This document shows positions 2,560 through 32,963 of a stretch of 64,000 bases of DNA, in pieces. The first letter of the stretch is position 1; each line of letters opens with the position of its first letter. The position numbers and the translations under genes are program-made. This DNA comes from Magallana gigas (lineage: Eukaryota), in contig NC_088860.1 in NCBI RefSeq assembly GCF_963853765.1, positions 37,262,001 through 37,326,000 of the forward strand, given 5' to 3'. Below the pieces are notes generated by a model. The model saw nothing but the letters and a program-made list of their open reading frames with translations. It was not told the origin of the DNA and made no database searches.

Positions 2560-5500
2560 TTACGTTTGACATTCCTCGTATTTGCTACAGGTGCAGCACT
2601 GTGGAAGCCTCAGTTGGACGAGTCTAAACCCACAGTTTTCACAGTAGATCCAGGTGTCAAACTGGCGGAAACTGTCCATCAGACACTCGCTGGGTTTATC
2701 TGGGTCATTTTCCAGGCAGCCTCTGTTAATGAAAGAACAAAAGTTATGACGTATCTACATCACTTAACCTTGCATTAGAAACATTATGAAGAATAAGAAG
2801 AAAAGAAATCGCCCTAATAATGTGACACTAGTGCTATTTCTTTATTCCATCCAGTTTAAGTAAACTATATATTTGCATTGTTACTCCTTTTGCAATTTCT
2901 TCGCGCTGCGTTTGACCTTTTACCTATTAATAATTATTTTAAAAAATTTCACATCGTTGGAAATAATTTTAATATAATATTTTTTAAATACGCTATAAAC
3001 TATTATTTGAACTGTACAATACTGCTTTATTGTCAATTTCTTCAATTCTGTGCTATCTTTTAATGAAAAAGGAATTATTTTGCTGGTATTTCTGTATCAA
3101 TCAGGAATTGACCTATCTATATACGATACTGTAAGAGATATCATAATATTTTATCATTATTCAACAGACTATTTTTGGAATTATCTTATTTTTGCGACCA
3201 CTTTGACATCGCAGCGATACAATGCGCAATGTTATATTCTGTTAAGCTTAAAAAAAACAACCTTTTTGTAAAAATGACTGACGCAAATAAAAAGAGTGAC
3301 ACATTTACCCCCTTTACTGCAAATTTTGTGCTATGTAAAATAACCCAATTATAAATTATTTCAAAGAAAGGTCATGTACTTACGATTTGTCTTCACACTT
3401 TGCGTATCTGATACATTGACTTTCAGGCTTGACGACATAACACGTTTTTCCATAAACCTGGACCTTTGTAGGATAGGCAACCTCTGATGGACAGACATTT
3501 GTCAGACCAACAGACTTGTAATAGCTAAAACAGAAATCATCTCATTAAAAACAATAAAATACTTCCAGTTTAATTGATATATAAAAAAAATGTCCTTAAA
3601 AAAGAAATTTCTTAAAAGGTTATCTGATGAAATGAGTTTTTAGCACTTGCATTGTTATAGATATTGACAGTATACATGTGAGTATTACTATGTATATAAT
3701 TGCTATCAACTTTAAAAAAGACTTGAACTATGAATTAAAACTTCTCAAACGTCTCTTTGTCGTCTGTTTTTGCTTCAATGATCTTTAATATCCCATACCT
3801 GTTGTCACAACGGATGTATTTTTCTTTAATGGCAGCCAAAACGCTTGGGTTCTTTCTTAAGAGGTATTCAATTTTCAATCTAAAATAAATGCATAGAATT
3901 TTCAACTTTTAACAACTAATAATTGATATAGGCAGAATATAAACTGATATTTGAAAAGAATGATATAAATGATATACAAAGGAATCATTAGACCTCATGG
4001 TGTCTCAATTTTCGTTGAATTCCTGGGAACCTCTGTCTTTTATATGTATAAGATAACACACGAAATTACGTTTCAACGAACCAATAAAATTTAAACAATC
4101 TACAAAAGTCGCCCTCACGAATTTTAATGATTCCACAATATATGATACATGTACCTATAAAATAGTATTAAAAATAAATCCAACGTTTTAAATAAAAGAA
4201 GAATATTCAAAAGATTTTTTTCTAATAACTTTATAGATGATTTATTTAACACAAATATAGCAATATCATATTTTTGAAGACATGTTTCAATAATTTCATT
4301 AAGTATTTTATTTGTCTAAGAAACAAAATCAACATTTAATTATGAAAAAAAAATCTATTTTGATTTAAGGTAACTCCGTATCTATAAAATTATGGGTTCA
4401 AAGTTAAAAACTTAACTGTTTTTTAACTTATTAGACTTGAATTTCATCAAAAAATAAATAAAATATATATGTATCCATACTATTTAAGATGTAAGATAAT
4501 AAAAACCAAAGGCTGAAATTATCATCTGAAAATTACTTTTTTTGGTTTAAAAATTAAATATAAGTGGATGGATACTTGTTTGTCTATTTAAATTTTATCG
4601 CTTACTTTGCCAGAAAACTAAAATTAATTAAAAAAAAGAAAAAATTGTTTACATTAGAAAAATTATAGCATTTAGATATATCACTTAGAGAAAAGTAGAA
4701 AAGAGTTATTTCCCTTTGTCATTATTGAATTATGTCGAATAAAAGGATAAAGAACGCTTATTAAATATCTCCAAGTAAACAATAATTTGAGTTTTTGATG
4801 TGCACCTATCATAACATAGAAATTACAAATCTACTTGCAATAATTTTAATGAATTCATGGTTTATGTAAAATGTATGACGTCACAGGAGGGTGGATTTAC
4901 TTTAAAAAGGTTTTTTGTCCAACGACACTCCTAACAAACCTTACTGTTAAGCAAAACTAGAAAATTGTATCTCCTTTTTAACAGCAGCTTACTTTGTACT
5001 GGCTGGTATGCAATCGTCAGAGACAGGGAGAGTGGGGTTCTCCGGGCCGTCCGTCCAGCATTCATCCTCTTTGTCAAAATCTCCGTAAATGCTTGTTTTG
5101 TCATATAACTCCACAGCAAAGGCATCTGCTGCCTCTGTGGTCACCCAAAAAAGGGCAGAACCAATCAAAGTGAGGAATATGGCCTGAAATATTTTTTATA
5201 AACAGTTACTTTAAACGTTAAATTGAACACCCTAGTTTGTGAGAGATACTGAAAGCGATATAAAATATCGAATATATAAGAGGACATACAGTAAATCACG
5301 CTTATAATGAACTGAACCTTACACTTAAATGGACGTGATTTTCATTCTCTGTGGGGAACATATTGTGAAATTAACGGATGTAACAAATTATCTTTATAAC
5401 GAAGTGAAAAGCCCCTCCCTGGCTCTTTTTATAAACGTGTTTTACTGTACATGTAACGGTGTACTGAATTTTATATATCTTTATTAAGAACCTTAGCTAG

Positions 5501-6654
5501 AAAAAAAAGTGGCCCTGAATTCCTCTAATTATGATATATTCAGATTACATATGTGTGAAAATTGATGAATTGATATGAAATAATATGGATGTTTAAAAGA
5601 TGTTTTAAAAATAAAATAAAAAAAATAAAAAAATGTTTTAAAGTTATATTTATCTTATACATTTATTTGTGTAATAGTTTTAAAACATGTATAAAACCAG
5701 TGTTTGTTTTTATGTCAGTCTCTCTTACAGTCTCATAACTGATATTAACAACAACGTTCGCGAATTGTAGCGCTATTTAACAATTTTAAAAAGAAAAATG
5801 GATGATAATTATTTAATAACATTATAATTGTGTACCTCATCTGAATACATATTTCCTTAAAACAAACGCCATAGTTTAAAAAAAAATTACAGAAAAATTA
5901 TGCAAACTAAGCAAATTGATTCCAAGACTGAAAAAATGAGAATATTTCTATTCTCTTAAGATCCATTTTAGAGTAACTATGTCCCTCTATTCGGGATAAT
6001 GAATCTTTTCAGACATATATTTTGCAGTAAACCATGTTTTTGTAAATCATTTGAAATAATTTAAACCCGACATTATAGTATTTCTAAAAACAACCGAAAT
6101 ACCGAAATAAAAAAAAATTCTTCCATAACGTTAAGTATTTAAAAGAATGATTTTGTTTAAGAATTAAAAAAAAAAGTTTTATGTAGCCGCAAACAACATT
6201 CATACATTCGAAGTTTTGATCGCAAATTAAATGGATTGTCTTCGTTACAAATATATTTTAAACCTCTGACCTTCATTTAAATGACCTATCCTTGCATAAG
6301 AAATTATACCCAGGTGTAGACGTGGTCAATATTTTCTGTAAGGAGCGAGAAAAAAGCTCAAGTCCCATATAGAAATTACTGACAACGCAAAAACATCGTA
6401 AGGTGTAACGTAACGTAATCACTACTGAGTAATTGTGAATAAAACAAAACTTCACTCGGTTGCTGTTAACCTAACACTTTTTTATTTTACAAATTAGCAG
6501 GCTGTAAAACATGACACGATACAAGACAATTAACCCCTTTTCATCCAGTATTGCACCAACCAAGGTTTTGTTGAAAACTAATTTGTTATCCTTGAAATTC
6601 ATATTAGAATTAAATCAAAGAAAGTTTTGTAAAAGATGAAATATTTACCTTCAT
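2560..6654 (-). CDS. Gene B1: secreted Spaetzle-like cystine-knot protein, 166 aa, 4 coding exons, intact
   Basis: Exons 6654-6649 (ATG AAG|GT), 5183-4993, 3524-3384, 2722-2560. All introns GT-AG, phases 0/2/2, 501 nt total. Protein: MKAIFLTLIGSALFWVTTEA-ADAFAVELYDKTSIYGDFDKEDECWTDGPENPTLPVSDDCIPASTNYYKSVGLTNVCPSEVAYPTKVQVYGKTCYVVKPESQCIRYAKCEDKSGCLENDPDKPSECLMDSFRQFDTWIYCENCGFRLVQLRLPQCCTCSKYEECQT*. Hydrophobic signal peptide; C-terminal LPQCCTC resembles Spaetzle IPSCCKC. AATAAA on the minus strand at 2500-2505. Gene structure is well supported; the family name is pattern-based. Confidence 0.88.
4369..4901. mobile_element. Kolobok-like non-autonomous element in B1 intron 2, absent from B2
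   Basis: TTAA|GGTAACTCC ... GGATTTACT|TTAA, with subterminal TGACGTCA. The matching site in unit 2 (~14920-14935) is empty. Confidence 0.7.
5289..5447. mobile_element. TA-flanked MITE in B intron 1 (copy at 15309-15467; same family at 61423-61596)
   Basis: TA|CAGTAAATCACG ... CGTGTTTTACTG|TA. Confidence 0.7.
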
Positions 6655-7729
6655 GATGTACAACTGCTGAATCAAGATGACTGAATATACCTATGAATCA
6701 TTCTCTTTTATATGCTTGGTGTGTTACAAAACATGCTAATTAGTATACACATTATTATTCGATAAAATCTTTTCACCTATTCAATTTTCAATGCTTAGTC
6801 CAAATTGATTTAGTACATGGTACATACCATCACTATCTGATGCTTGAGGTTTAATAGGATAAGTTTATCTAGTGCCCCAAACGTCACGATTTGCTTCTTT
6901 CCAAAGAACTGTCCAATGTAGTTTTTCTTGGAAACAAAATTTTACTCTTTGTAATTTAAAACATTTAAGGAGGCTGGTTGGTCAACACAATTAAAAATTA
7001 GATCTAGCTTAAATTTTAAAGAAATAAATCAACATTTATTCAAGAAACTGAAATTTCACTTTAAAGTTTCTATGTTTTTTAATATCTTTATACAGAACTC
7101 TTCTTTTGAAGAAGAACGACTTAGTCTAAACATATTAAGTGATGTCCGTTCAGTCCCTTTAAAATTTATAAATATATTTTCATATTTAGATACCCCCCAG
7201 CCACTTTTTAAAATCAGATTTCTTGTTTTTTTTTTTTAAATCAAGTTTCGTGTTAATTCTTTTTTGTTTTTTGCTTTTCTACATTTTTTTCTTTCAACTC
7301 ATAATTCCTCCTAAAATTGGCGCTGTATAATAATTTGCTCTATATAATATGGGTGACAGAACATTTTCTCTAATATTTTTTCGAAGGTGTTCTAGTGTGG
7401 TTTAAACTTAAAAATTATACCAATACAAAAGGTTTTTTAAATTAACTCCTTGAATACATTTCGTTTTAAATGTATTAATAACAGATTAACTATTGATTTT
7501 TCATCGATTCTTCGATTATACAACTTTAATGTAGTTTCATAACGTGATTGAGATTTGCAGATGAGTTGATATGATAATTTGTTAAAACGTTAATTTTCAG
7601 TCTATACACATTTGATGGGCTTAAGATATGCAAAATATATACGCGTTGTATAACATACACGGTATTTATACAGGGTGATTTTGAGCCGTAAGTCATAAGT
7701 CACCCACTAAGTGAACATCGGCAAACATC
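6655..7729. promoter_or_regulatory. Divergent (bidirectional) intergenic promoter region between B1 and A1; repeated at 16632-17706 and, longer and diverged, at 28953-31286
   Basis: B side: TATAAAAG on the minus strand at 6705-6712, 30 nt upstream of an Inr-like TCAGT (6680-6684). The same geometry is in B3 (TATAAAA 29015-29021, TTAGT 28990-28994). A side: TATTTATA at 7663-7670, about 30 nt before TAAGTC. Confidence 0.6.
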
Positions 7730-9688
7730 ATGCAGGTAAGTTTAAGACTGTAACCAAAAATTAATTTACGGTGTATGCCATTTAATATGCAATTCTACCA
7801 CTGTTATTTTATTTGATTTTTTGAAAAAAGCTAATTATAAAAAGTATCACAAAAATTTTTTGGTTATTGAATGTTTAAAAATAATTATTATAGACTGTTT
7901 TTCATGCGATGCTCGACTTTCCAAATATTGTAAATATTAAAGTCGATAATTGTGTTTTGACAATGATATTGATTGATGAAATCTGTCTTTGAAATCAAAG
8001 TGTTTATTATATTTGCAAGAACTTTGTATACTTTAACATTGAATAAAAGAAAATGCACGTGTTTTGCAACAAATCATTCAGTTCTGGTTAACATTGAAAA
8101 CTGCAAATGCCGAGGGTCAGTCAGGAGAGTAATTGGAAGTTTGATTGAAGCTAAGACATGTGATTGCTTTGTGATCTGATCCAGAACAAAATATATTCTA
8201 AGAATAAGTACGACAACAAAACCAGCACAATTATACTCTTGGGATATTCAGAGATAGAAAAGTATTTAGACTCCAAATATTTTATTGATATACAAAATTA
8301 AATTACACGAGTAATACCACTATTTATTAGTTCTCGAAACCTGAATTTTTTTCAATGGTAAATTAAGACGACATACGAAAAATTTATCCCAGAATGATTT
8401 GACATGCATAAAAAGATTGTTTTCAATTCATAATGTTCATTTAATCATCTTAAAGGTCATAACTGTGGTCTTTGCGATTTCTCTCCTGTTCTGGAGTCAC
8501 GTGGTCGGTGAGGATTCTCTTGTTGCTAAACAAGCTGAACGTCGTGATACTGACTTGTATGCCTATTCGGAGTATGACAAAACTAGCCTGTATGGAGAGT
8601 ATAACAAAGAGGACAAATGCTGGACAGATGGACCTACTAACCCTGAGCTACCAGTTGGAGACGAGTGTCAAAGCGCGGCTGTGAAGTAAGATTAGCCTCC
8701 ACAATATTGTATTGCTTATCTACATACATCAAATATTCATTCAAGTAAACATGCAAACATCTTTTTAATACTTTGACATATGATAGAAAAAAAGTAGTTG
8801 TTTTTAGTTTACACGTGAAAGATGGAAAGATTGAACGTATATAATTAATAATTGATAACGAACAATAATATGATCATAATATTTATTATTTTTTCAGGCT
8901 GAAGATTGAGTATCTTTTGAGAAAGAATCCAGCTGTTAATGAAGAAATCAAAGAGAAATATCTTCACTGCGCAAACACGTAAATTAAATTCTACACAATA
9001 TGTGATTAATTGATTAAAAAACCATTTCAATCAGAGCAGAGAAATTGGACATTTGATATATTTCATGTATTTTAATTTTTTAAAAATGTATGCAAAACTG
9101 GTTTTTAGCTACTACACTCCATATGGGCTGGATAATGTTTGTCCCAGCGAGGTCACCTTTCCTACGACAGTTGAAATATATGGCAAGACCTGTTACATCG
9201 TCAAGCCAGAAAAGCAATGTCTGACCTACGTGAAATGTGACGACGCACCGTAAGTATAAGATAAATAATACTTGCATTTGCCAAAACCGCTTAATCTTAA
9301 AATATAAATCTTTGAATGACTTTATTTAAGACTTATATTCAGACTAATTTAAAAAAATACATGGAGAAACTAATAAAACAATGCTTTACAGTCTATTATA
9401 GGAAAAAATTGAATTGAATTGAAACCTCAATTACATATAGTTTAATTTGTTTAAAAAAAACAAACAAACATCCTTCTCGAAAACCCCCCCTAAAGTCACA
9501 GGAATATATAGTGTAAAATTATCTCTAGGGGCTGCTCTGGTTCAACGACAGAAGAAAGCAAGTGTTTGATGTCATACTTCCGTGACTTCAATGCATGGGT
9601 TTATTGCGAGAATTGTGGATTTACGATGGTCAAGCTAAGACTTCCACAATGCTGCACATGTAACAAGTATGAAGAATGTGATACGTAA
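7730..9688 (+). CDS. Gene A1: secreted Spaetzle-like cystine-knot protein with short pro-segment, 178 aa, 4 coding exons, intact
   Basis: Exons 7730-7735 (ATG CAG|GT), 8456-8685, 9109-9249, 9529-9688. GT-AG introns, phases 0/2/2, 537 nt. Protein: MQVITVVFAISLLFWSHVVG-EDSLVAKQAERR-DTDLYAYSEYDKTSLYGEYNKEDKCWTDGPTNPELPVGDECQSAAVNYYTPYGLDNVCPSEVTFPTTVEIYGKTCYIVKPEKQCLTYVKCDDAPGCSGSTTEESKCLMSYFRDFNAWVYCENCGFTMVKLRLPQCCTCNKYEECDT*. AATAAA at 9723-9728. Confidence 0.88.
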
Positions 9689-12600
9689 AAAAACCATTTG
9701 ATGATTGCACCGGTATGGTTTAAATAAATTGAATCCAATCCATAACTGTCTTATGTGTTTTATGTATTTGGGGAAAAAATTGCTTTGTTCTGCAATATTG
9801 TGTGAGGTACACACTAAAAGGAATTGATGTTCGTAGCATGTGTTTTTTTTCGAATTAGTACCAGTATAACGACGCAATGCATACTTTGTGTTTCGGATGC
9901 AACCTTAAAAGTTTCATATTTTTTAAATATACGTGTATTGAATTTTATCATAACAGTCAAACTTTTCCGATTTTATCTTAATCAACTTTAAAAATGGCTT
10001 TGCTTTGATAAAAACAATACCTGCTGTTTTCGAACTCGGGTTATAGGCCACAGCTGTACACACACATGTAGTGCTACAGAATTAGACACCCACTTCAAGT
10101 CATTTAATTTTGATACTTTCAATTACACCCGTAAATATTTTCCTTTATCAAACACGATTTGTGCAATCTGCTGCTATATCTGCATAATATCAGCTTGGAT
10201 CAAGAGGTCAAGCAGCGCATAACTAATCTGGATCAATCATTTTTCCATGTAAGAAAACTAGCCGACTCACATCTAGTATTGTAATGAAAACACATAAAAT
10301 AGAAATAAAAACGTAAACGCAATACCACAGATCTTTCGTGTATAGACCTACCAATATTACCTTAACAACGATCATCATTATCTTGCAAATAGAAAATAAT
10401 ACAAGTAATCGGTAAACCATGTATAGCGCCAGTTAACAGCGTTGTAAAGTAAACGAGTTTAAGACAACCACTCATTGGTATACTCTACTTAATTCTAAAA
10501 AAAATTGATTCCATAAGAAGCAAAATATTTTAATCTTTAAAGATAGATATACTTTCACAAATATTGGCAAAGTCATTTTTATCAACCAAAAACTGATATG
10601 AAATATAGCCATAATATGCAAGATGGTTTTTAAAACAATAAGCAAAATAATCCTCAAAATATCGCTTATATAAACGTGCAACCCACCGAAATACTTTTCC
10701 AAACTATTTCTTCAATTTTGGGATAATAACGTTATAAAACAACTCAAGCGAACCTGAATTATTTAAGAGTTATGTAAAACGGATTTATAATATAGACAAT
10801 ATACATTACGTTATCATAATGTGCAAGCAACCATACCTGCTTAACATAATAATTTGAAAACAATAAGCGTTTAAACAGCCTTATATGTTTTTAAAATTAT
10901 GTAAAAAAAAAATAAGAAAATGTAATATTCAAGAAAAAGATTATCAAACGTGTTGATATAATTGTTTTTCCAACGGGTTAGAACATTCAATCCTTGTCCA
11001 AGGCATTTACCATTTTATACAACTTCATTGTGGGTAAAATATGGAACACGAAGTCCGTTCGTTAACATGTCATCCAACAGCAAATATCTTATTAATATAT
11101 CAGAAGATATTTTATTTCTATTTCTAACATGTCATCTAATTTTAGAAACTTTTAAATATGCTTATCCTAGAGATTATTTTCATCCAACATTGAAGTAATA
11201 GCCTGTGTTTTTACGGTATTCTACTCCCATTGAAAGTTTATTTTATGTATCGCTATATTTTAGGCATATATGTTACCTTATATTATTTTTTATGTACATT
11301 CATTTTTCAAAAAGGCATGTCCTGTATGTTTTGTTAGGTTTTGCTTACAATTATCGTCTGTAAAAACGTTTTCAGGATAACAATGTGAACTAATATCTGT
11401 TATCTTATTCTGCTATTTTGTTTAAATTAAAGGCAGTATTATTATTGTTATATTTGAATTGCTTTGTGGTTGGTTTTGAAGTGAGGAACTGGTAAAATTA
11501 TTTACCGAATTTAATAAATTATTCACAAATAGCAATAATTACCCTATCTACCGGTTTCAGACGGTTTGTATTTTCAAACTCAGTATGCTAAAAAGTATTC
11601 TTTATGTGGTAACTTCCCCCAATTTACTCGAAATATCATTTCTGGGTGGAACAGTTCCTACGATCCCCGCTCACTACTAGTATATAAAAGAGTTCCAGGG
11701 ACGACTTTTCTCGTATATATACATGTACATGTGTCTTAAAAAACACAAACTCAAAAACGTGATATATTTAAAGAATTTCAGGTAAATAAATACACGTATC
11801 GATCTGCACATGTGGATAATGTAATCCAAGCGCTTATTTGAAATTCATTTGCTTTAACAAAGTTTGTTAGATAAAAATTGACTACGCGACAATTACCGCA
11901 TCTAAAGTGTCAACAGGTAGCTGATTATGTAATGGGAAATAATCACCGAGAAAACACCCTCATTACACTCGGTATCCGCAGAAATACCCCAAACGGAGTC
12001 CGGAAACACGCATAAAAAGGTAGTCAAAGTTTGATACATGTATAATATATTGTATATTTATTTTTATAGTAAATAATAATAAAGAAAATTTATATGGGAT
12101 TCGAACGATGCACAGTTGTCCTGCATTTATGTGATTAACATTTTCACCATCTGTATGTAAATGTTCACATATCATAGTTTGTATGTAAGCAGTGGAACAC
12201 ATTTGTTTCAATTTACTAAGTCAGAGAAAACGAAACACTACCACCAACCAGATTTGTAGTACTCCGACTTTATATAAGCTGGATGTAGCTGTTATTTTTG
12301 GCTATTTTAAGGTAATTTAGAACTTCCTGGACCTTGATCAGGACACGGGTACTTAAAACTTGTTTGATATAATGTATGTGAAATAAATCTTGTTTGTAGC
12401 AGTTTATTCAAAGAACAGTGGGGTTGGAATCACTAGACTCATTCGTTATCAATCAATGAAGTTTGCATAACATAATATTTTCACAACTTTGACATTTACC
12501 TCACATCGAGCATTATATGCTATTATGTAACTTAAATAACGTATTAAATTTAAACATCCTATTATTTATTTATCAGGTATTTTGAATAATAAATGAAATG

Positions 12601-13147
12601 GCAATAATATGATACATTTTCTATACTATTCACCTTAGATATATTATGCGGTTTGTCTATTTATTGCGTGTGTGTGTATGCCGTCATTAAAGAAAATGCC
12701 ACAAAGTTATGGCATCTCTCTATTTTATTATTTTATCCCCAAACCAAATATTTGTACTATTCCAATTTTATCATTTATAAAGAATCAATGATTTTTTTGT
12801 AATACTTTGTAAAAGCTGTTTGTCCCCTGCAAAAATTTGGGTTCAGTTCGTTCTATGTTGAATTTTCTCTTTCTTCGATTTTAAAAAATGACAGTTGTCA
12901 CGTGCCAAGGAAAGTAAGAACAAGACATTAAAATCAAAATTAAATATCATTTTTAAAGTACATTCGTCACAAAGACATTCAAATACTCAAACCATTTCTA
13001 TTATCTACTTATACCTAGTAATACATATTCCAAACCACAAGTGTCACAAATGGAATCAAGGAACAAGTTAGACGTTTTGAACAGATTTTAATATTTCTAT
13101 AATATGCATGTTTGTCACAGAACCAAAAACTGTTCTGCACCTCTCCT

Positions 13148-16100
13148 CTATCCCGATCCCGATTGACATTCCTCGTATTTGCTACAGGTGCAACACTGTG
13201 GAAGCCTCAGTTGGACGAGTCTAAACCCACAGTTTTCACAGTAGATCCAGGTGTCAAACTGGCGGAAACTGTCCATCAGACACTCGCTTTTTGATGCGTC
13301 ATTTTCCAGGCAGCCTCTGTTAATGAAAGAACAAAAGTTATGACGTATCTACATTACTTAACCTTGCATTGGAAACATTATGAAGAATAAGAAGAAAAGA
13401 AATCGCCCTTATAATGTGACACTAGTGCTATTTCTATAAACTATTATTTGAACTGTACAATACTGCTTTATTGTCAATTTCTTCAATTCTGAGCTATCTT
13501 TTAATGAAAAAGGAATTATTTTGCTGGTATTTCTGTATCAATCAGGAATTGACCTATCTGGATACGATACTGTACGAGATTTCTTTTTAAGGACATTTTT
13601 TATATATCAATTAAACTGAAAGTATTTTATTGTTTTTAATCTTATCATAATTCAACATGCTATTTTTGGAATTATCTTATGTTTGCAACCACTTTGACAT
13701 CGCAGCAATACAGTGCGCAATGTTATATTCTGTTTAATTTGTTTCAAAAAACCCTTTTTGTAAAAATGACTGACGCAAATAAAAAGAGTGACACATTTAC
13801 CCCCTTTACTGCAAATTTTTTGCTATGTAAAAAAGACCCAATGATAAAGTATTTCAAAGAAAGGTCATGTACTTACGATTTCCCTTCACACTTTGCGTAT
13901 CTGATACATTGACTTTCAGGCTTGACGACATAACACATTGTTCCATAAACCTGGACCTTTGTAGGATAGGCAACCTCTGATGGACAGACATTTGTCAGCC
14001 CAACAGACTTGTAATAGCTAAAAAGAAAAATCATATCATTAAAAACAATAAAATACTTTCAGTTTAATTGATATATAAAAAAAATGTCCTTAAATAGAAA
14101 TTTCTTGAAAGGTTTTCTCATGAAATGAGTTTTTAGCACTTGTATTGTTAAAGATATTGACAGTATACATGTAAGTATTACTATGTATATAATTGCTATC
14201 AACTTTAAAAAAGACTTGGATTATGAATTAAAACTTCTCAAACGTTTCTTTGTCGTCTCTTTTTGCTTCAATGATCATTAATCTCCCATACCTGTTGTCA
14301 CAACGGATGTATTTTTCTTTAATGGCAGCCAAAACGCTTGGGTTCTTTCTTAAGAGGTATTCAATTTTCAGCCTAAAATAAATGCATAGAATTTTCAACT
14401 TTTATCAAAAATTGATAAGTAATAATTAATATAGGCAGAATATCAACTGATATTTGAAAAGAATGATATAAATGATATACAAAGGAATCATTAGACCTCA
14501 TGGTGTCTCAATTTTCGTTGAATTCCTGGGAACCTCTTATCTACGAATAAATACTCTTCACAAATTTATAAATGATGACTATAAAGTCATGTTGTCTTTT
14601 ATATGTATAAGATAACACACGAAATTACGTTTCAACGAACCAATAAAATCTAAACAATCTACAAAAGTCGCCCTCACGAATTTTAATGATTCCACAATAT
14701 ATGATACATGTACCTATAAAATAGTATTAAAAATAAATCCAACGTTTTAAATAAAAGAAGAATATTCAAATGATTTTTTTCTAATAACTTTATAGATGAT
14801 TTATTCAACACAAATATAGCAATATCATATTTCTTATGACATGTTTCAATAAGTTCATTGAGTATTTTGTTTGTCTAAGAAACAAAATCAACATTTAATT
14901 ATGAAAAAAAAATCTATTTTGATTCAAAATGTTTTTTGTCCAACGACACTCCTAACAAACCTTACTGTTAAGCAAAACTAGAAAATGTTATCTCCTTTTT
15001 AACACATTCTTACTTTGTACTGGCTGGTATGCAATCGTCAGAGACAGGGAGAGTAGGGTTCTCCGGGCCGTCCGTCCAGCATTCATCCTCTTTGTCAAAA
15101 TCTCCGTAAATGCTTGTTTTGTCATATAACTCCACAGCAAAGGCATCTGCTGCCTCTGTGGTCACCCAAAAAAGGGCAGAACCAATCAAAGTGAGGAAAA
15201 TGGCCTGAAATATTTTTTATAAACAGTTACTTTAAACATTAAATTGAACACCGTAGTTTGTGATAGATACTGAAAGCGATATAAAAAATCGAATATATAA
15301 GAGGCATACAGTAAATCACGCTTATAATGAACTGACCCATACAATTAGATGGACGTAATTTTCATTCACTGTGGGGAACATGTTGTGAAATTAACGGATA
15401 AAACAAATTATCTTTATAACGAAGTGAAAAGCCCCTCCCTGGCTCTTTTTATAAACGTGTTTTACTGTACATGTAACGGTGTACTGAATCTTATATATCT
15501 TTATTAAGAACCTTAGCTAGAAAAAAAAGTGGCCCTGAATTCCTCTAATTATGATATATTCAGATTACATATGTATGAAAATGGAACAATTGATTTATAT
15601 TAAAATGGATGTTTAAAAGATGTTTTAAAATTTTTAAAAAGTTTTAAAGTTATATTGACCGTATACATTTATTTGTGTAATCGTTTTAAAACATGTATAA
15701 AATGAGTGTTTGCTTTTATGTCAGTCTCTCTTACAGTCTCATAACTGATATTAACCACAACGTTCGCGAATTGTAGCGCTATTTAACAATCTTTAACAGA
15801 AAAATGGATGATAATTATTTATACCTCATCTGTATGCATATTTCCTTGAAACAAACGTCATAGTTTTAAAAAAATACAGAAAAATTGTGCAAACTAAGCA
15901 AATGATTCCAAAACTGAAAAAATGAGAATATTTCTATTCTCTTAATATCCATTTTAGAGTAACTATGTCCCTCTATTCGGGATAATGAATCATTTTAGAC
16001 AGATATTTTGCAGTAAACCATGTTTTTGTAAATCATTTGACATGATTTAAACCCGACATTATAGTATTTCTAAATACAACCGAAATAAAAAAAAACTTCT

Positions 16101-16631
16101 TCCATAAAGTTTAGTATTTAATAGAATGTTTTTGTTTAAAATTAAAAAAAAAGTTTTGTGTATCCGCAATCAACTTTTATACATTCGAAGTTTTGATTGA
16201 CAATTAAATGGATTGTCTTCGTTACAAATATAGTTTAAACCTCTGACCTTCATTTAAATGACCTATCCTTGTATAAAAAATTATACCCAGGTGTGGACGT
16301 GGTCAATATTTTCTGTAAGGAGCGAGAAAAAAGCTAAAGTCCCATATAGAAATTACTGACAACGCAAAAACAACAAAAGGTGTAACGTAACGTAATCACT
16401 ACTGAGTGATTGTGATTAAAACAAAACTTCACTCGGTTGCTGTTAAACTAACACTTTTTTATTTTACAAATTAGCAGGCTGTAAAACATGACACGATACA
16501 AGACAATTAACCCCTTTTCATCCAGTATTGCACCAACCAAGGTTTTGTTGAAAACTAATTTGTTATCCTTGAAATTCATATTAGAATTAAATCAAAGAAA
16601 GTTTTGTAAAAGATGAAATATTTACCTTCAT
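13148..16631 (-). CDS. Gene B2: Spaetzle-like cystine-knot protein, 168 aa, intact paralog of B1
   Basis: Exons 16631-16626, 15204-15014, 14017-13877, 13316-13148. Differs from B1 at YGTMC (vs YGKTC), CEGKS (vs CEDKS), ENDASKSEC (vs ENDPDKPSEC) and the C-terminus ECQSGSG* (vs ECQT*). All 14 Cys retained. Confidence 0.87.
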
Positions 16632-19669: not shown

Positions 19670-22600
19670 AAAAACCATTTGATGATTGCACTGGTATGGT
19701 TTAAATAAATTGAATCCAATCCATAACTGTCTTATGTGTTTTATGTATTTGGGGAAAAAATTGCTTTGTTCTGCAATATTGTGTGAGGTACACACTAAAA
19801 GGAATTGATGTTCGTAGCATGTGTTTTTTTTCGAATTAGTACCAGTATAACGACGCAATGCATACTTTGTGTTTCGGATGCAACCTTAAAAGTTTCATAT
19901 TTTTTAAATATACGTGTATTGAATTTTATCATAACAGTCAAACTTTTCCGATTTTATCTTAATCAACTTTAAAAAAAATGGCTTTGCTTTGATAAAAACA
20001 ATACCTGCTGTTTTCGAACTCGGGTTATAGGCCACAGCTGTACACACACATGTAGTGCTACAGAATTAGACACCCACTTCAAGTCATTTAATTTTGATAC
20101 TTTCATTTACACCCGTAAATATTTTCCTTTATCAAACACGATTTGTGCAATCTGCTGCTATATCTGCATAATATCAGCTTGGATCAAGAGGTCAAGCAGT
20201 GCATAACTAATCTGGATCAATCCTTTTTCCATGTAAGAAAACTAGCCGACTCACATCTAGTATTGTAATGAAAACACATAAAATAGAAATAAAAAACGTA
20301 AACGCAATACCACAGATCTTTCGTGTATAGACCTACCAATATTACCTTAACAACGATCATCATTATCTTGCAAATAGAAAATAATACAAGTAATCGGTAC
20401 ATCATGTATAGCGCCAGTTAACAGCGTTGTAAAGTAAACGAGTTTAAGACAACCACTCTTTGGTATACTCTACTTAATTCTAAAAAAAAATGATTCCATA
20501 AGAAGCAAAATATTTTAATCTTTGAAGATAGATATACTTTCACAAATATTGGCAAAGTCATTTTTATCAACCAAAAACTGATATGAAATATAGCCATAAT
20601 ATGCAAGATGGTTTTTAAAACAATAAGCAAAATAATCCTCTAAAATAACGCTTATATAAACGTGCAACCCACCGAAATACTTTTCCAAACTATTTCTTCA
20701 ATTTTGGGATAATAACGTTATAAAACAACTCAAGCGAACCTGAATTATTTAAGAGTTATGTAAAACGGATTTATAATATAGACAATATACATTACGTTAT
20801 CATAATGTGCAAGCAACCATACCTGCTTAACATAATAATTTGAAAATAATAAGCGTTTAAACAGCCTTATATGTTTTTAAAATTATGTAAAAAAAATAAC
20901 AAAAATGTAATATTCAAGAAAAAGATTATCAAACGTGTTGATATAATTGTTTTTCCAACGGGTTAGAACATTCAATCCTTGTCCAAGGCATTTACCATTT
21001 TATACAACTTCATTGTGGGTAAAATATGGAACACGAAGTCCGTTCGTTAACATGTCATCCAACAGCAAATATCTTATTAATATATCAGAAGATATTTTAT
21101 TTCTATTTCTAACATGTCATCTAATTTAAGAAACTTTTAAATATGCTTATCCTAGAGATTATTTTCATCCAACATTGCAGTAATAGCCTGTGTTTTTACG
21201 GTATTCTACTCCCATTGAAAGTTTATTTTATGTATTGCTATATTTTAGGCATATATGTTACCTTATATTATTTTTTATGTACATTCATTTTTCAAAAAGG
21301 CATTTCCTGTATGTTTTGTTAGTTTTTGCTTACAATTATCGTCTGTAAAAAAGTTTTCAGGATAACAATGTGAACTAATATCTGTTATCTTATTCTGCTA
21401 TTTTGTTTAAATTAAAGGCAGTATCATTATTGTTATATTTGAATTGCTTTGTGGTTGGTTTTGAAGTGAGGAACTGGTAAAATTATTTACCGAATTTAAT
21501 AAATTATTCACAAATTGCAATAATTACCCTATCTACCGGTTTCAGACGGTTTGTATTTTCAAACTCAGTATGCTAAAAAGTATTCTTTATGTGGTAACTT
21601 CCCCCAATTTACTCGAAATATAATTTCTGGGTGGAACAGTTCCTAAGATCCCCGCTCACTATATATAAGAGTTCCAGGGACGGCTTTTCTCGTATATATA
21701 CATGTACATGTGTCTTAAAAAACACAAACTCAAAAACGTGATATATTTAAAGAATTTCAAGTAAATAAATACAGGTATCGATCTGCACATGTGGATAATG
21801 TAATCCAAGCGCTCGTTTGAAATTCATTTGCTTTAACAAAATTTGTTAGATAAAAATTGACCACGCGACAATTACCGCATCTAAAGTGTCAACAGGTAGC
21901 TGATTATGTAATGGGAAATAATCACCGAGAAAACACCCTCATTACACTCGGTATCCGCAGAAATACCCCAAACGGAGTCCGGAAACACGCATAAAAAAGG
22001 TAGTCAAAGTTTGATACATGTACATGTATAATATATTGTATATTTATTTTTATAGTAAATAATAATAAAGAAAATTTATATGGGATTCGAACGATGCACA
22101 GTTGTCCTGCATTTATGTGATTAACATTTTCACCATCTGTATATAAATGTTCACATATCATAGGTTTGTATGTAAGCAGTGGAACACATTTGTTTCAATT
22201 TACTAAGTCAGAGAAAACGAAACACTTCCACCAACCAGATTTGTAGTACTCCGACTTTATATAAGCTGGATGTAGCTGTTATTTTTGGCTATTTTAAGGT
22301 AATTTAGAACTTCCTGGACCTTGATCAGGACACGGGTACTTAAAACTTGTTTGATATAATGTATGTGAAATAAATCTTGTTTGTAGCAGTTTATTCAAAG
22401 AACAGTGGGGTTGGAATCACTAGACTCATTCGTTATCATTCAATGAAGTTTGCATAACATAATATTTTCACAACTTTGACATTTACCTGACATCGAGGAT
22501 TATATGCTATTATGTAACTTAAATAACGTATTAAATTTAAACATCCTATTATTTATTTATCAGGTATTTTGGATAATAAATGAAATGGCAATAATATGAT

Positions 22601-22864
22601 ACATTTTCTATACTATTCACCTTAGATATATTGTGCGGTTTGTCTATTTATTGCGTGTGTGTGTGTATGCCGTCATTAAAGAAAATGCCACAAAGTTATG
22701 GCATCTCTCTATTTTATTATTTTATCCCCAAACCAAATATTTGTACTATTCCAATTTTATCATTTATAAAGAATCAATGATTTTTTTGTAATTTTTTGTA
22801 AAAGCTGTTTGTCCCCTGCAAAAAATTGGGTTCAGTTCGTTCTATGTTGAATTTTCTCTTTCTT

Positions 22865-25130: not shown

Positions 25131-25178
<48 letters not shown>

Positions 25179-26764: not shown

Positions 26765-27112
26765 GAGTTTACAGGAACAAAGTGAGGATATCTTCAACAT
26801 AAAATTCAGAGGAACATTCCAGTTTTGATAGAAGCTGTAAAAACTTAATCAACTTTCTGAAGTCAAAGTAATAAGGGAAATGTTCAGTTAAGATAAATGC
26901 ACATATTCCATGGTAAAATTGTTAACAAAGTTTAGTAAGATATCATACAATAGGTAAATGTTACCAATAATAATAATATATGATTCAATAAAACTTAGAT
27001 TGATCTCGAAATACATGATTTTAATACTTGAAGTAAATAACATTATTCAGAATTTTTTATCACAAAGTTTAGACTGAGCCATTGCCCATAAAGTTTCAAA
27101 GAATGTACTCAC

Positions 27113-28952
27113 GACTTAACTTCACACTTTGCATATCTGATACATTGACTTTCAGGCTTGACGACGTAACACGTGGTTCCATACACCTCGACCTTGATAG
27201 GATAGGCAACCTCTGATGGACAGACATTTGTCAGCCCAACAGACTTGTAATAGCTAAAACATGATATCAAAAATGATCAATAATCCTGTTATATTAAAAT
27301 GTAATAAAAGAAAAACAACTACAACCCTAAAAAGCAACGTGATAGATAAAATGTTTTAGGGTACAAAAAAATTCATGATCATACTCTTGTTTTTTTAAAT
27401 ATATAGAGGCGGTATATTTCTATTCTATAGATCTTTCCTATTTTTTTATCGTAGGACACCTTAAATTAAATCTTAGAATTGAAATCATTTCTAAATAAGC
27501 GTTTCCCCAAAAAAGAATAAAATATGAGAACGCTGCCGTCTGTTCTTAAATTCAAAACATTTGATCTTAAACTCTCATACCTTTTGTCACAACGGATGTA
27601 TTTTTCTTTGATAACAGCCATTACACTTGGGTTCTTTCTTAAGAGGTATTCGATTTTAAGTCTAAAAAAATCATATTACATTGGCATTTCTCTCAGACGT
27701 AAAAAAAACGTTATGCTCTTAACTACATAAAAAGTCCAAAAATATGTCAACCCAGGTATGCACATTTTTGAACAGTTACTAAACAGCAACTTACTTAGTA
27801 CTGGCTGGTATGCAATCATCAGAGACAGGGAGAGTGGGGTTCTCCGGGCCGTCCTTCCAACATTCATTGTCTTTGTCAAAATCTCCGTAAATGCTTGTTT
27901 TGTCATAAAACTCCACAGCAAAGGTATCTGCTGCCTCTGTGGCCACCACAAATAAGAATGGCCCAACCAAGGCAAGGAATATGGTCTAAAGAAAAATAAT
28001 AAAAGAAAACCTTTATCTTTAAAACATTATCGCTCTTGTTTAGTTACTGCATTTAATTAATCATTTCACTATTTCAAAGTACCCATTTTGTAATCAGTGC
28101 ACATATGTATGCATGATTATTTTGGAAAATATAAGAATGAAAATTAGTAGAATAACAAGTCAAGATAGAATTGAAGCATTTTTGCATTCGGTTAATTCTT
28201 TTACAGGTAAGTTTGGAGGTAATTTAGTCATTTGAAGGAAAACTGTCTCATTTTTTAAATTAAAGATTTAAGAATGTTTTTTTCCTTTTTTGCGTTTCAC
28301 TTGTTACAAAATTGTTGCTTAGTTTATATTTAGCATAATTGTGATATAGGAAATATGTAAAAAACATTGTTTTGATGATCAAAATAATCATTTTATGTAC
28401 ATGTATGCATTAAACCTTGACTTGTTAGAAATTAAATGATTTTCCTTGAAAAATATATGTTTATACAAAATTTGTCCCTTCATTCTTTTAAATAAGAAGT
28501 AGACGATAATTTGGCATGTTTATTTATACCCTTGATGCTTACAAAAATTAATGCATTTAACGTGGAAAGAATAAATGTAGTTTTAACTCCAAGTCTGGTT
28601 ACATGTTGATATTTAAGTAGTCTAGCTTGCCTTCGATAAAATACGAATTGCGTTAAAATGTATTAAATCATTGCCCTTTCATTCAAATTCTGCACTGTCG
28701 TTAAGATATCATGCGATTTTCTTGACTTAATGTTGCAAAACTGAAACAAAACATATATGAATAACACCTTACCAGCTCTTTTTTGTACACGCATTACTCG
28801 GTACATGTATAACGATATTTGAAACTTTCTCATATTTTTGCTCTAAAGCTACGTAACGCACAAATTCATTATTTCAAGTTTACGTAACAATATTTTACCT
28901 TAAATGAGTAATTAAAATAAATCTTTAAAAATGATGAAAATTTTACCTGCAT
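27113..28952 (-). pseudogene. Gene B3: 3'-truncated paralog of B (exons 1-3 intact, exon 4 not found)
   Basis: Exons 28952-28947 (ATG CAG|GT), 27985-27795 (TIFLALVGPFLFVVATEAADTFAVEFYDKTSIYGDFDKDNECWKDGPENP...), 27253-27113 (YYKSVGLTNVCPSEVAYPIKVEVYGTTCYVVKPESQCIRYAKCEVKS|GTGAG). I found no exon-4-like sequence between 22865 and 27112. Confidence 0.72.
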
Positions 28953-31286: not shown

Positions 31287-32963
31287 ATGCAGGTAAGGTT
31301 TCTAGATGAAAAAGTGAATAAATAACTTATGTCTGAAGTGAATATGTTTTTAATAAAGATAAAGCTTCCAGTTAAGTAATTTAGGTGCAGCTGATCAATC
31401 AAACGACGAACAGTTTTTAACGAAAAATTATTAGAAATTTGAAAAATTGAGAATAGATTGCTTTTCTGTGATGAAATTTTTAAGATCGAGACATGTACAT
31501 TTTCTTAAAAACAAAGATAAGCCTCTGGTTTGTGGTTCGAAAGCATTAAGGTCCATGTAGGCTCAAAATACTTAACTGAGATACAAAATTAAAGTACACG
31601 AGTAATACCACTATTTATAAGAGAAGTTCTCGAAACAAGAGTTCTTTTTAATATTAAGTTGAAACGACATACGAACAATTTATCCCGGAATGATTTGACA
31701 TGCATAAAACGATTATTGTCTATTCATAATGTTAATTTAATCATCTTAAAGGTCATAACTGTGGTCATTGCGATTTCTCTCCTGTTCTGGAGTCACGTGG
31801 TGGGTGAGGATTCTCCTGTCGCTAAATAAGCCGAACGCCGTGATGCTGACTTGTATGCTGTTTCGCGTTATGACAAAACTAGCCTGTATGGAGAGTATGA
31901 CAAAGAGGGTGAATGCTGGACAGATGGACCTACTAATCCAGACCTACCAGTTGGAGACGAGTGTCAAAGCGCGGCCGTGAAGCAAGATTAGCCACCGCAA
32001 TAATGTACTGCTTATCTTCATCAAATATTCATTCAAGTTAACATGCAAACATTTTTTTTAATACTTTGCCATATGATGGAAAAAAATGCAGTTGCTTTTT
32101 AGTTTACACGTGCAAGATGGAACGTATATAATTAACAATTGATAACGAAAAATAATTTGTTGATAAAATTATTATTTCAGGCTGAAGATTGAGTATCGTT
32201 TGAGAAAGAATCCAGCTGTTAATGAGGAAATCAAAGAAAAATATCTTCACTGCGCAAACACGTAAATTAAATTCTATACAATATGTGATTAATTGATTAA
32301 TTGATTCAAAAACCATTTCAATCAAAACAAATAAATTGGACATTTGATATATTTCATGTATTTTAATTTTGTAAAAAAAATATGCAAAACTGGTTTTTAG
32401 CTACTACACTCCATATGGGCTGGATAATGTTTGTCCCAGCGAGGTCACCTTTCCTACGACAGTTGAAATATATGGCAAGACCTGTTACATCGTCAAGCCA
32501 GAAAAGCAATGTCTGACCTATGTGAAATGTGACGACGCACCGTAAGTATAAGATAAATAATACTTGCATTTGCTAAAACCGCTTAATCTTAAAAAATAAA
32601 TCTTTTGAATGACTATTTCAGATTTAAATTCAGAATAATTTTAAAAAAATACATGGAGAAACTAATAAAACAATGCTATACAGTCTATTATAACAAAAAA
32701 AGCATGTTCGAATTAAAACATCAATTACATATAGTTTAATTTCTTTAAAATTAACCAAACAAACATCCCTCTTGAATATATATTGTAAAATTATTTCTAG
32801 GGGCTGCTCTGGTTCAGATACAGAAGATAGCAAGTGTTTGATGTCTTACTTCCGTGACTTCAATGCATGGGTTTATTGCGAGAATTGTGGATTTACGATG
32901 GTCAAGCTAAGACTTCCACAATGCTGCACATGTAACAAGTATGAACAATGTACCCCCCTGTAA
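31287..32963 (+). pseudogene. Gene A3: paralog of A with premature stop
   Basis: Exons 31287-31292, 31752-31981, 32401-32541, 32801-32963. CAA>TAA at 31827-31829 (Gln in the pro-segment). Intron-2 donor is GC (GCAAG, 31982) rather than GT. Downstream frame is otherwise intact and ends ...PQCCTCNKYEQCTPL*. Confidence 0.85.

What the first reader, a model, noticed from the sequence alone, without database searches (positions are those of the whole stretch)
2560..32963. Head-to-head pairs of Spaetzle-like cystine-knot genes, copied three times as a linked unit: candidate two-subunit secreted ligand system
Seen: two paralogs (A on plus, B on minus) face away from each other across about 1.1 kb. 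They have identical intron positions and phases, all 14 Cys, and about 90 of 148 identical mature residues by hand count. The pair was duplicated, retained and lost as a unit, and none of it shows in the ORF track because of a 6 nt first coding exon and three introns. Established: Drosophila Spaetzle and the NGF family are cystine-knot dimers; Spaetzle ends in PSCCxC and activates Toll; bursicon and GPA2/GPB5 are heterodimeric cystine-knot hormones. Inference: A and B are co-expressed from a shared promoter and may form an A/B heterodimer acting as an immune, neuroendocrine or extracellular signal in a mollusc. I cannot tell whether this family is already annotated.
Basis: partly seen in the sequence, partly recalled or inferred. 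Interest (0 to 1): 0.85.

Follow-up and report, generated by a model that had tools for sequence, protein, structure and literature searches.

The report
Paired oyster cystine-knot ligand genes
This stretch of the Pacific oyster genome carries three back-to-back pairs of genes for small secreted, cysteine-rich proteins that are predicted to fold like nerve growth factor, Spaetzle and horseshoe-crab coagulogen; the family is oyster-only and unstudied, and the proposed two-subunit hormone remains untested.

Summary
The window is Magallana (Crassostrea) gigas. It carries three head-to-head pairs, B on minus and A on plus, of five-exon genes. Each gene has a 6-nt first coding exon and identical intron positions and phases (0,2,2,2). 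My spliced models for A1, A2 and B2 equal RefSeq "uncharacterized protein" entries letter for letter. The family is therefore annotated but unnamed.

Corrections:
- Each protein has 15 aligned Cys, not 14.
- The ATG-to-ATG spacer is 1.08 kb in pairs 1 and 2 but 2.3 kb in pair 3.
- Pair 3 is broken in this haplotype: A3 has a nonsense codon and B3 lacks exon 5.

Fold: AlphaFold models (B2 pLDDT 80) match almost only cystine-knot proteins. Coagulogen aligns over the whole mature chain (Z 6.3-7.2) and NGF over the knot (Z about 5). No Pfam model reaches threshold (Spaetzle 12.5 bits against 27).

Distribution: the family was found only in oysters. The A/B split predates the Crassostrea-Magallana split, and the pair stays head-to-head in C. 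virginica and C. angulata.

A shared promoter is not supported, because each gene has its own conserved TATA promoter. A heterodimer is untested, and run lists hint at partly uncoupled expression.

Verdict: a new, divergent cystine-knot family of moderate interest.

The parts
2560..6654 (-). Gene B1, 193 aa. Coding exons 6649-6654, 4993-5183, 3799-3879, 3384-3524 and 2560-2722 (stop included). AATAAA at 2500-2505.
   Evidence: canonical GT-AG introns and an open frame. It is 97% identical to B2. It is not a called gene in the assembly's annotation.
6703..6714 (-). TATA box of B1 (CATATAAAAGAG), about 50 nt upstream of the B1 ATG.
   Evidence: The same element occurs at 16680-16691 (B2), and a related one at 29010-29023 (B3).
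7663..7674 (+). TATA-like box of A1 (TATTTATACAGG). An octamer-like AGATATGCAAAA lies at 7624-7635.
   Evidence: Both elements recur upstream of A2 (17643, 17604) and A3 (31221, 31181).
7730..9688 (+). Gene A1, 205 aa. Coding exons 7730-7735, 8456-8685, 8898-8978, 9109-9249 and 9529-9688. AATAAA at 9723-9728.
   Evidence: The product is identical to P0019, XP_034329505.2. The gene is called at this place in GCA_963853765.1.
13148..16631 (-). Gene B2, 195 aa. Coding exons 16626-16631, 15014-15204, 14292-14372, 13877-14017 and 13148-13316.
   Evidence: The product is identical to P0054, XP_065926216.1.
17707..19669 (+). Gene A2, 205 aa. Coding exons 17707-17712, 18437-18666, 18879-18959, 19090-19230 and 19510-19669.
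   Evidence: The product is identical to P0021, XP_011455180.2, LOC105347707.
27113..28952 (-). B3, truncated copy. Exons 28947-28952, 27795-27985, 27581-27661 and 27113-27253. No exon 5 is present in the window.
   Evidence: An intact B3-type protein exists in the 2012 M. gigas assembly (K1R0F2, P0075) and in C. angulata (P0068).
31287..32963 (+). A3, probable pseudogene. Exons 31287-31292, 31752-31981, 32181-32261, 32401-32541 and 32801-32963. In-frame TAA at 31827-31829 and a GC donor at 31982.
   Evidence: The C. angulata orthologue P0020 is intact.
2474..22864 (.). Tandem segmental duplication of about 10 kb. Copy 1 (2474-12875) and copy 2 (13072-22864) are 93-97% identical. Each copy carries one B/A pair plus about 3 kb downstream of A.

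Best explanation
SHOWN. The region holds three tandem head-to-head pairs of paralogous five-exon genes in the Pacific oyster. Two A copies and two B copies are intact; the third pair is broken in this haplotype. The genes encode secreted proteins of about 190-205 aa. These have a hydrophobic signal peptide and 15 conserved Cys. The predicted structure is two-part: a small N-terminal beta/helical module packed on a C-terminal cystine-knot domain of the NGF/Spaetzle/coagulogen type. The family was detected only in oysters (Ostreidae) and matches no curated family model. A and B arose by an inverted duplication before Crassostrea and Magallana split, and have stayed adjacent and divergent since. 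Both types are under moderate purifying selection and both are transcribed and spliced. Each gene has its own TATA promoter.

INFERRED. After signal-peptide removal (and, in A only, possible cutting at a conserved Arg-Arg), the proteins are released. They then act outside the cell as disulfide-linked dimeric ligands, in the manner of Spaetzle and the neurotrophins. The odd Cys count leaves one Cys free for an inter-chain bond. An oyster Toll-like receptor or another cystine-knot-binding receptor is the most likely target. Whether the dimers are A:A, B:B or A:B is open. On present evidence the head-to-head layout is most simply a legacy of the inverted duplication, not proof of co-regulation.
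For: Gene models:
- Models are exact matches to RefSeq proteins.
- RNA contigs L007 and L008 are spliced as modelled.

Fold:
- AF2 model of B2: pLDDT 80.3, pTM 0.71, all five models 79-80.
- AF2 model of A1: pLDDT 68.6.
- Every one of the top 50 Foldseek PDB hits for both models is a cystine-knot protein: NT-3, NGF, sclerostin, VWF-CTCK, Norrin, coagulogen, Spaetzle 3e07, IL-17.
- In the search against 48,161 representative chains, only 45 reach Z>=2 and most of them, including all of the top 27, are cystine-knot proteins. The top hit is coagulogen 1aoc at Z 7.2, with 129 residues aligned over model 32-187 and chain 1-175. NGF follows at Z 5.0. The second look gives Z 6.3 and about 5.
- Nearest clusters by protein-language-model features carry PF16077 Spaetzle, then NGF, for both A and B (0.94, 201-203 of 256 features).
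- Nearest ESM Atlas shape is a Spaetzle cluster, TM 0.50.

Cys count: 15 aligned Cys in all A and B proteins of three species.

Selection: dN/dS is 0.22-0.35 within types.

Phylogeny: the A clade has support 99/96 and the B clade 94/94, each with a C. virginica member.

Synteny: head-to-head pairs occur in C. angulata (1.13 kb) and C. virginica (3.1 kb).

Distribution: all hits in a 1.8-billion and a 5.8-billion protein library that carry a source name are Ostreidae; the rest are unnamed Logan or ENA fragments.

Promoters: separate and type-specific.
Against: - No family HMM reaches its threshold: Spaetzle 12.5 of 27 bits, DAN 16.8 of 22.
- Sequence profiles find nothing in the PDB.
- All structural scores are middling (Foldseek E >= 0.005, Z <= 7.2). 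They rest on predicted models whose disulfide map I could not inspect.
- No Spaetzle-like activating cleavage site is evident between the N-terminal module and the knot.
- No receptor, tissue or induction data were obtained.
- The function as a ligand is inference from the fold alone. Proteins of this fold also act as clotting proteins and as ligand antagonists.
Confidence: 0.6

Rival explanations
1. A and B are obligatorily co-expressed from one shared bidirectional promoter and form an A/B heterodimer, a two-subunit hormone or cytokine like bursicon, GPA2/GPB5 or IL-17A/F.
For: - The divergent A/B pair has been kept since before the Crassostrea-Magallana split.
- Copy numbers stay matched: 3:3 in M. 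gigas and C. angulata, 1:1 intact in C. virginica.
- Both proteins keep 15 Cys, an odd number.
- There are 11 fixed type-specific substitutions against 78 residues invariant in both types.
- Both members of pair 3 are broken in the same haplotype.
- Runs X1 and X8 hold exon-sized shares of both genes.
Against: - Each gene has its own TATA box and type-specific conserved proximal sequence. The spacer varies from 1.08 to 3.1 kb and is not alignable between pair 1 and pair 3.
- Matched copy number follows automatically from duplication of a segment.
- Runs rich in B (X25-X29, share 0.31-0.41) are missing from the list for the stretch that holds A. Runs of studies P2 and P5 that hold the A stretch are missing from the B list. 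This is weak evidence because the lists are capped and based on short exact words.
- Relatives occur as singletons in Ostrea and on another M. gigas chromosome, so the fold does not need a partner.
- No multimer prediction or read laying was possible.
Confidence: 0.15
2. Coagulogen-like structural protein. A secreted precursor is cut by a protease and then self-associates, as a wound plug, a haemocyte-aggregation matrix or an adhesive, rather than signalling through a receptor.
For: - The best structural match for both models is horseshoe-crab coagulogen, and it is the only match that covers the whole mature chain. Figures: Z 5.5, 7.2 and 6.3; 129-134 residues aligned; chain 1-175.
- The predicted mature size is about 173-176 aa (inferred from the signal-peptide and Arg-Arg cut sites) against the 175-residue coagulogen chain.
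- It is rich in Cys, and has helices preceding the knot.
Against: - Z 6-7 is in the range the tool calls middling.
- There is no sequence or HMM similarity to coagulogen.
- No conserved Arg cleavage sites flank the helical segment.
- From my own knowledge, plasma clotting of the Limulus type is not known in bivalves.
- Coagulogen is itself regarded as a Spaetzle/NGF relative, so the match does not separate the two functions.
Confidence: 0.12
3. Secreted antagonist of the Noggin/DAN/sclerostin kind. It would bind and block BMP or Wnt-pathway ligands or co-receptors, for example in shell or larval patterning.
For: - The best Pfam signal in the family is DAN (E 0.0069, 16.8 bits, 4 of 37 members).
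- Sclerostin is the top Foldseek hit for B2 (E 4.6e-3).
- Noggin aligns over model residues 23-186 at Z 4.8-5.0.
Against: - The DAN score is below its cut-off of 22 bits.
- Protein-language-model neighbours are Spaetzle and NGF, not DAN.
- NGF-family chains outnumber and outscore DAN-family chains in both structural lists.
- The C-terminal CCxC motif is of the Spaetzle/NGF type (from my own knowledge).
Confidence: 0.08

Closest known systems
Spaetzle (Drosophila Toll ligand; Pfam PF16077)
   Same: - Secreted, with a predicted cystine-knot fold with long beta-hairpins.
- C-terminal CCxC motif. The end of the Pfam profile aligns to it in P0002.
- Odd Cys number, compatible with one inter-chain disulfide.
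- Nearest clusters by language-model features and by Atlas shape.
   Different: - No member reaches the Pfam threshold (best 12.5 of 27 bits).
- Solved Spaetzle C106 (3e07) scores only Z 3.1.
- 12 Cys in the knot half, against 7 in Spaetzle C106 (from my own knowledge).
- The N-terminal module is short, structured and Cys-linked, not a long pro-domain.
- No evident activating Arg cleavage site before the knot.
Horseshoe-crab coagulogen (PDB 1AOC)
   Same: - The only solved chain that aligns over the whole mature protein: N-terminal strands, helices and knot. Figures: Z 6.3-7.2, about 130 residues, 19-20% identity.
- Similar length and Cys richness.
   Different: - No detectable sequence or HMM similarity.
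- No matching pair of Arg cleavage sites.
- Arthropod clotting function with no known bivalve counterpart.
- The Z score is only middling.
Neurotrophins (NGF, BDNF, NT-3, NT-4; PF00243)
   Same: The knot domain (model residues about 98-191) aligns to NGF-family chains at Z 4.5-5.3, rmsd 3.1-3.9 A, 84-92 residues, mostly 17-22% identity. BDNF/NT-3 and BDNF/NT-4 show that heterodimers occur in this fold (PDB titles).
   Different: - No PF00243 hit.
- Twice as many Cys.
- An extra N-terminal module kept in the mature chain.
- Restricted to oysters.
Heterodimeric cystine-knot hormones (bursicon/partner of bursicon, GPA2/GPB5) and the IL-17A/F pair
   Same: Two paralogous cystine-knot subunits encoded by linked genes. 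GPA2/GPB5 (8enb) and IL-17 appear among the weaker structural matches.
   Different: Those are distinct knot subfamilies (glycoprotein-hormone/DAN type and IL-17 type). Here, heterodimer formation and co-expression are not shown.

Membership tests
Spaetzle (PF16077) | Match to the family HMM at or above the gathering score (27 bits) | tested here: not met
   Best 12.5 bits, E 0.23 (P0002). Only 3 of 37 members give any hit at E<=10. A1, A2 and B2 give none.
Spaetzle (PF16077) | Cystine-knot fold with a C-terminal CCxC strand | tested here: met
   AF2 models hit almost only cystine-knot proteins. QCC[TS]C is invariant in 37 members. The disulfide map itself was not inspected.
Spaetzle (PF16077) | Pro-protein activated by serine-protease cleavage after Arg just before the knot domain | tested here: inconclusive
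   No conserved basic site lies between the helical module and the knot in the alignment. Only A-type, the LOC105324248 type and some others have an Arg-Arg near the N-terminus.
Spaetzle (PF16077) | Binds and activates a Toll receptor as a disulfide-linked dimer | not testable with these tools
   No binding or multimer tool was available. The odd Cys count (15) is compatible.
NGF / neurotrophin (PF00243) | Match to the family HMM; six-Cys knot | tested here: not met
   No PF00243 hit at E<=10 in 37 members. Structural similarity of the knot domain is only Z about 5.
Coagulogen / coagulin | Sequence or HMM similarity to coagulogen | tested here: not met
   No Pfam hit and no PDB sequence hit to 1AOC at E<=10, with single sequences or with 18- and 37-member profiles.
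Coagulogen / coagulin | Whole-chain fold: N-terminal strand, helix, NGF-like knot | tested here: inconclusive
   Top structural match for both models, covering chain 1-175, but at Z 5.5-7.2 and rmsd 4.6-5.6 A.
DAN / sclerostin (PF03045) | Match to the family HMM at or above 22 bits | tested here: not met
   Best 16.8 bits, E 0.0069 (P0008); 4 of 37 members.
Bidirectional (shared) promoter gene pair | Divergent starts less than about 1 kb apart, driven by one common promoter region | tested here: not met
   The orientation is divergent. But each gene has its own TATA box and type-specific conserved proximal sequence. ATG-to-ATG distances are 1,076, 1,076, 2,335, 1,129 (C. angulata) and 3,091 bp (C. 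virginica). The spacers of pairs 1 and 3 do not align.
Heterodimeric cystine-knot ligand | Both subunits made in the same cells and joined in one dimer | not testable with these tools
The run lists show some runs with both genes and several with only one. No multimer prediction was available.

The most novel reading that the evidence does not exclude
A and B are the two chains of an oyster-specific heterodimeric Spaetzle/coagulogen-like cytokine. It would serve as an endogenous ligand for part of the greatly expanded oyster Toll-like receptor repertoire, giving lophotrochozoans a Spaetzle-Toll type of indirect pathogen sensing. Copy number and presence/absence variation (pair 3) would then tune immunity between individuals.
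Probability: 0.1. Interest if true: 0.85.

Novelty: new variant of a known kind. Interest (0 to 1): 0.5.

Why it matters
Oysters carry very many Toll-like receptors. A 2013 functional study of CgTLRs explicitly left open whether an endogenous, Spaetzle-like ligand is needed (PMC3788107, Discussion). A 2025 review of mollusc TLRs does not mention Spaetzle at all (PMC12521104).

This family is unnamed, absent from Pfam and not found in the papers searched. It is a concrete, clonable candidate for such a ligand. If not that, it could be a bivalve counterpart of coagulogen.

It also shows copy-number and pseudogene polymorphism within M. gigas, which is relevant to the known presence/absence variation of bivalve immune genes. 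The genomic facts are solid; the function is still a guess from the fold.

Tried and rejected
- Pfam on single exons gave nothing.
- Sequence-profile searches of the PDB with 18- and 37-member alignments, and with one knot domain, gave no hit at E<=10.
That used the only call. I masked them in my local BLAST copy. Splice junctions, transcript starts and co-expression therefore could not be read from raw reads.
- Paper searches for LOC105347707/8/9, LOC105324248, K1PSE1, K1PZR7, K1R0F2 and the XP accessions found nothing. Searches for Spaetzle-like or coagulogen-like proteins in oysters found no paper on this family.
- A profile-profile test against a Spaetzle or coagulogen alignment was not possible. 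No tool returned such sequences with ids, and I did not type sequences from memory.
- The spliced B1 protein has no stored id, so it was analysed only in scripts. B2 (97% identical) stood in for it in the fold and atlas searches.
- I considered that the Saccostrea head-to-head pair is orthologous to A/B. I rejected this because the tree places both Saccostrea genes, which fall in one 90%-identity cluster, outside the A+B clade.
- Two long ORFs elsewhere in the window (47882-48325 and 52464-52847, both minus) have no Pfam match.

Full report
**Where the window comes from**

Locus L003, fetched by exact look-up of protein P0019, matches window 1-19688 at 100% identity. It lies on OY970752.1 of Magallana (Crassostrea) gigas assembly GCA_963853765.1. 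G+C is about 30% throughout.

**What is there**

- A self-comparison shows a tandem segmental duplication of about 10 kb: 2474-12875 against 13072-22864, 93-97% identical. A third, older partial copy gives 8264-9828 against 31555-33105, 87% identical.
- tblastn with a provisional model, followed by exon mapping, finds six gene copies and no others in the 64 kb. The order is B1(-) A1(+), B2(-) A2(+), B3(-) A3(+).
- Reading the sequence and threading the frames gives one shared structure:
  - a 6-nt first coding exon (A: ATGCAG|GTAAGT; B1/B2: ATGAAG|GTAAAT; B3: ATGCAG|GTAAAA);
  - a phase-0 intron;
  - exons of 230 nt (A) or 191 nt (B), then 81, 141 and about 160 nt, separated by three phase-2 introns at homologous positions.
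- The models are not just plausible. A1, A2 and B2 are letter-for-letter identical to RefSeq XP_034329505.2, XP_011455180.2 (LOC105347707) and XP_065926216.1. All three are named 'uncharacterized protein'.
- Two RNA-derived Logan contigs are spliced at introns 2-4 exactly as modelled: L007 (A-type) and L008 (B-type). Both keep about 550 nt of the 3' end of intron 1.
- B1 is intact by my model (193 aa) but is not a called gene in this assembly.

- A1 against B1: 117 identities in 192 aligned positions, and 96 of the last 148. BLASTP of A1 against B2 gives 55% identity, E 7e-86.
- ATG-to-ATG distance is 1,076 bp in pairs 1 and 2, and 2,335 bp in pair 3.
- Pair 3 is defective here. A3 has TAA at 31827-31829 and a GC donor. 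B3 stops after exon 4, and no exon 5 exists anywhere in the window.
- Intact versions of both exist elsewhere:
  - K1R0F2 (P0075) in the 2012 M. gigas assembly is an intact B3-type protein.
  - P0020 and P0068 in C. angulata are the intact A3 and B3 orthologues.
  - So this is a polymorphism or a very recent decay.

**History of the copies**

- Pairs 1 and 2 are one recent duplicated unit.
- Pair 3 is less simple. A3 aligns to A1 through its introns, whereas B3 aligns to B1 only over exons. dS is 0.13 for A1-A3 but 0.30 for B1-B3. Gene conversion among A copies is the simplest reading.
- dN/dS within types is 0.22-0.35, which indicates purifying selection. dS between A and B is saturated.

**Family and distribution**

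- A profile of exon 5, searched against 1.84 billion representative proteins, found 13 hits.
- Word-indexed searches of 5.8 billion proteins with P0001, P0015 and an 18-member profile found about 25 clusters.
- Every cluster that carries a source name is from Ostreidae: M. gigas, C. angulata, C. virginica, Saccostrea echinata, S. cucullata and Ostrea edulis. The rest are unnamed Logan or ENA fragments. All named entries are 'uncharacterized' or 'Secreted protein'.
- None carries a precomputed Pfam domain.
- The maximum-likelihood tree gives:
  - an A clade that includes C. virginica LOC111134271 (support 99/96);
  - a B clade that includes LOC111134272 (94/94);
  - A and B as sisters (93/87);
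  - Saccostrea and Ostrea sequences outside.
- The A/B duplication therefore predates the Crassostrea-Magallana split.

**Synteny**

| Species and locus | Arrangement | ATG-to-ATG |
|---|---|---|
| C. angulata, L001 | A, B(-) A(+), ... B | 1,129 bp |
| C. virginica, L002 | A(-) B(+), plus fragments | 3,091 bp |
| S. echinata, L004 | own divergent pair in one 90%-identity cluster; independent inverted duplication by the tree | 6.9 kb |
| O. edulis (two loci) and M. gigas paralogue on OY970754.1 | singletons | none |
| Distant C. virginica subfamily | same-strand tandem | none |

The tiny first coding exon (6, 9 or 15 nt), the 81-nt exon 3 and phases 0,2,2,2 recur across the family.

**Fold**

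- Pfam gives nothing above threshold. The best Spaetzle score is 12.5 bits (cut-off 27) and the best DAN score 16.8 bits (cut-off 22).
- PDB sequence searches are blank.
- Protein-language-model neighbours of both A and B are Spaetzle-carrying clusters (0.94; 201-203 of 256 features), followed by NGF, Noggin and IL-17 clusters.
- AF2 on an 18-member alignment gave A1 a pLDDT of 68.6. On a 37-member alignment B2 reached pLDDT 80.3 and pTM 0.71, with all five models in agreement. The model has N-terminal strands, two helices and four long beta-strands.
- All top 50 Foldseek hits for both models are cystine-knot proteins, with E 0.005-0.2 and probability up to 1.0.
- In the Foldseek-independent scan of 48,161 chains, only 45 reach Z>=2 for B2. 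Most of them, including all of the top 27, are cystine-knot proteins. The leading hits are:
  - coagulogen 1aoc, Z 7.2, 129 residues aligned, model 32-187 to chain 1-175;
  - NGF, Z 5.0;
  - Noggin, Z 4.8;
  - sclerostin, Z 4.4;
  - Spaetzle 3e07, Z 3.1;
  - PTTH, Z 3.1.
- The second look agrees: coagulogen Z 6.3 and many NGF-family chains near Z 5 with 84-92 residues aligned.
- The best ESM Atlas shape match is a Spaetzle cluster, TM 0.50.
- I conclude that the cystine-knot fold of the NGF/Spaetzle/coagulogen kind is well supported. Membership of any one curated family is not.

**Promoters and co-expression**

- Each gene has its own TATA box 50-70 nt upstream of its ATG.
  - A: TATTTATA or TATATATAAAGG.
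  - B: CATATAAAAGAG or GATATAAAAAAGAG.
- Each type has its own upstream sequence conserved between the old and young pairs. In A this includes an octamer-like AGATATGCAAAA.
- The rest of the spacer does not align between pairs 1 and 3. This is not a single shared promoter; shared enhancers remain possible.
  - X1 and X8 hold exon-sized shares of both stretches.
  - Five runs that hold 0.31-0.41 of the B region are absent from the list for the stretch that contains A.
  - Runs of studies P2 and P5 on the A list are absent from the B list.
  - The lists are capped and word-based, so this is only a hint that expression is not strictly coupled.

**Mechanism**

Shown:
- a secreted-type N-terminus;
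- 15 conserved Cys;
- a predicted knot fold;
- purifying selection;
- transcription and splicing.

Inferred:
- The proteins are released and act as disulfide-linked dimers on a receptor, as Spaetzle and the neurotrophins do.
- The heterodimer idea is compatible with the odd Cys number, the long-kept linkage and the 11 fixed type-specific residues. Singletons in related oysters, and duplication of the pair as one segment, explain the same facts without it.

Rivals are a coagulogen-like self-assembling protein and a Noggin/DAN-like antagonist.

**Novelty**

I found no paper on these genes. It is a new, divergent, lineage-restricted family within a known fold class. It is interesting mainly as a candidate endogenous ligand in an animal with a huge TLR repertoire, a question left open in PMC3788107. 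I score interest at 0.5.

Noticed in passing
window 2560-6654 (-): B1 is intact by my model (193 aa, canonical splice sites). It is not among the called genes of GCA_963853765.1 at this place, while A1, B2 and A2 are.
   Followed up: partly
window 27113-28952 and 31287-32963: Both members of pair 3 are broken in this haplotype: B3 lacks exon 5, and A3 has TAA at 31827-31829 plus a GC donor. Intact B3-type K1R0F2 exists in the 2012 M. gigas assembly, and intact orthologues of both exist in C. angulata. This points to a structural or pseudogene polymorphism.
   Followed up: partly
window 8264-9828 vs 31555-33105; 3374-5153 vs 27103-27956: A3 aligns to A1 through its introns (87%), whereas B3 aligns to B1 only over exons. 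dS is 0.13 against 0.30. The A copies look homogenised by gene conversion.
   Followed up: partly
window 7624-7635, 17604-17615, 31181-31192: An octamer-like AGATATGCAAAA is conserved about 30 nt upstream of the TATA box of all three A copies and is absent from B promoters.
   Followed up: no
L007:1-757 and L008:3-772: RNA-derived contigs of both A and B types are spliced at introns 2-4 but keep about 550-570 nt of the 3' end of intron 1. This could be slow splicing of intron 1 or an internal start that would skip the 6-nt ATG exon. Older gene models (P0070, P0072) also start inside intron 1.
   Followed up: no
L004:878-14385 (Saccostrea echinata): A separate head-to-head pair of 197-aa family members from one 90%-identity cluster, 6.9 kb apart. 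The tree places it outside the A+B clade. Inverted duplication seems to recur in this family.
   Followed up: partly
L009:1-16093 (M. gigas OY970754.1): The paralogue of the LOC105324248 type is a singleton. It has seven coding exons (two extra short 3' exons). It lies divergently next to a gene for an LRR protein.
   Followed up: no
No letters of them were sent to any search tool afterwards. P0017, an ORF fragment that overlaps them, was not searched further.
   Followed up: no
window 25133-25174: A perfect (CT)21 microsatellite lies in the gap between pair 2 and the truncated B3.
   Followed up: no
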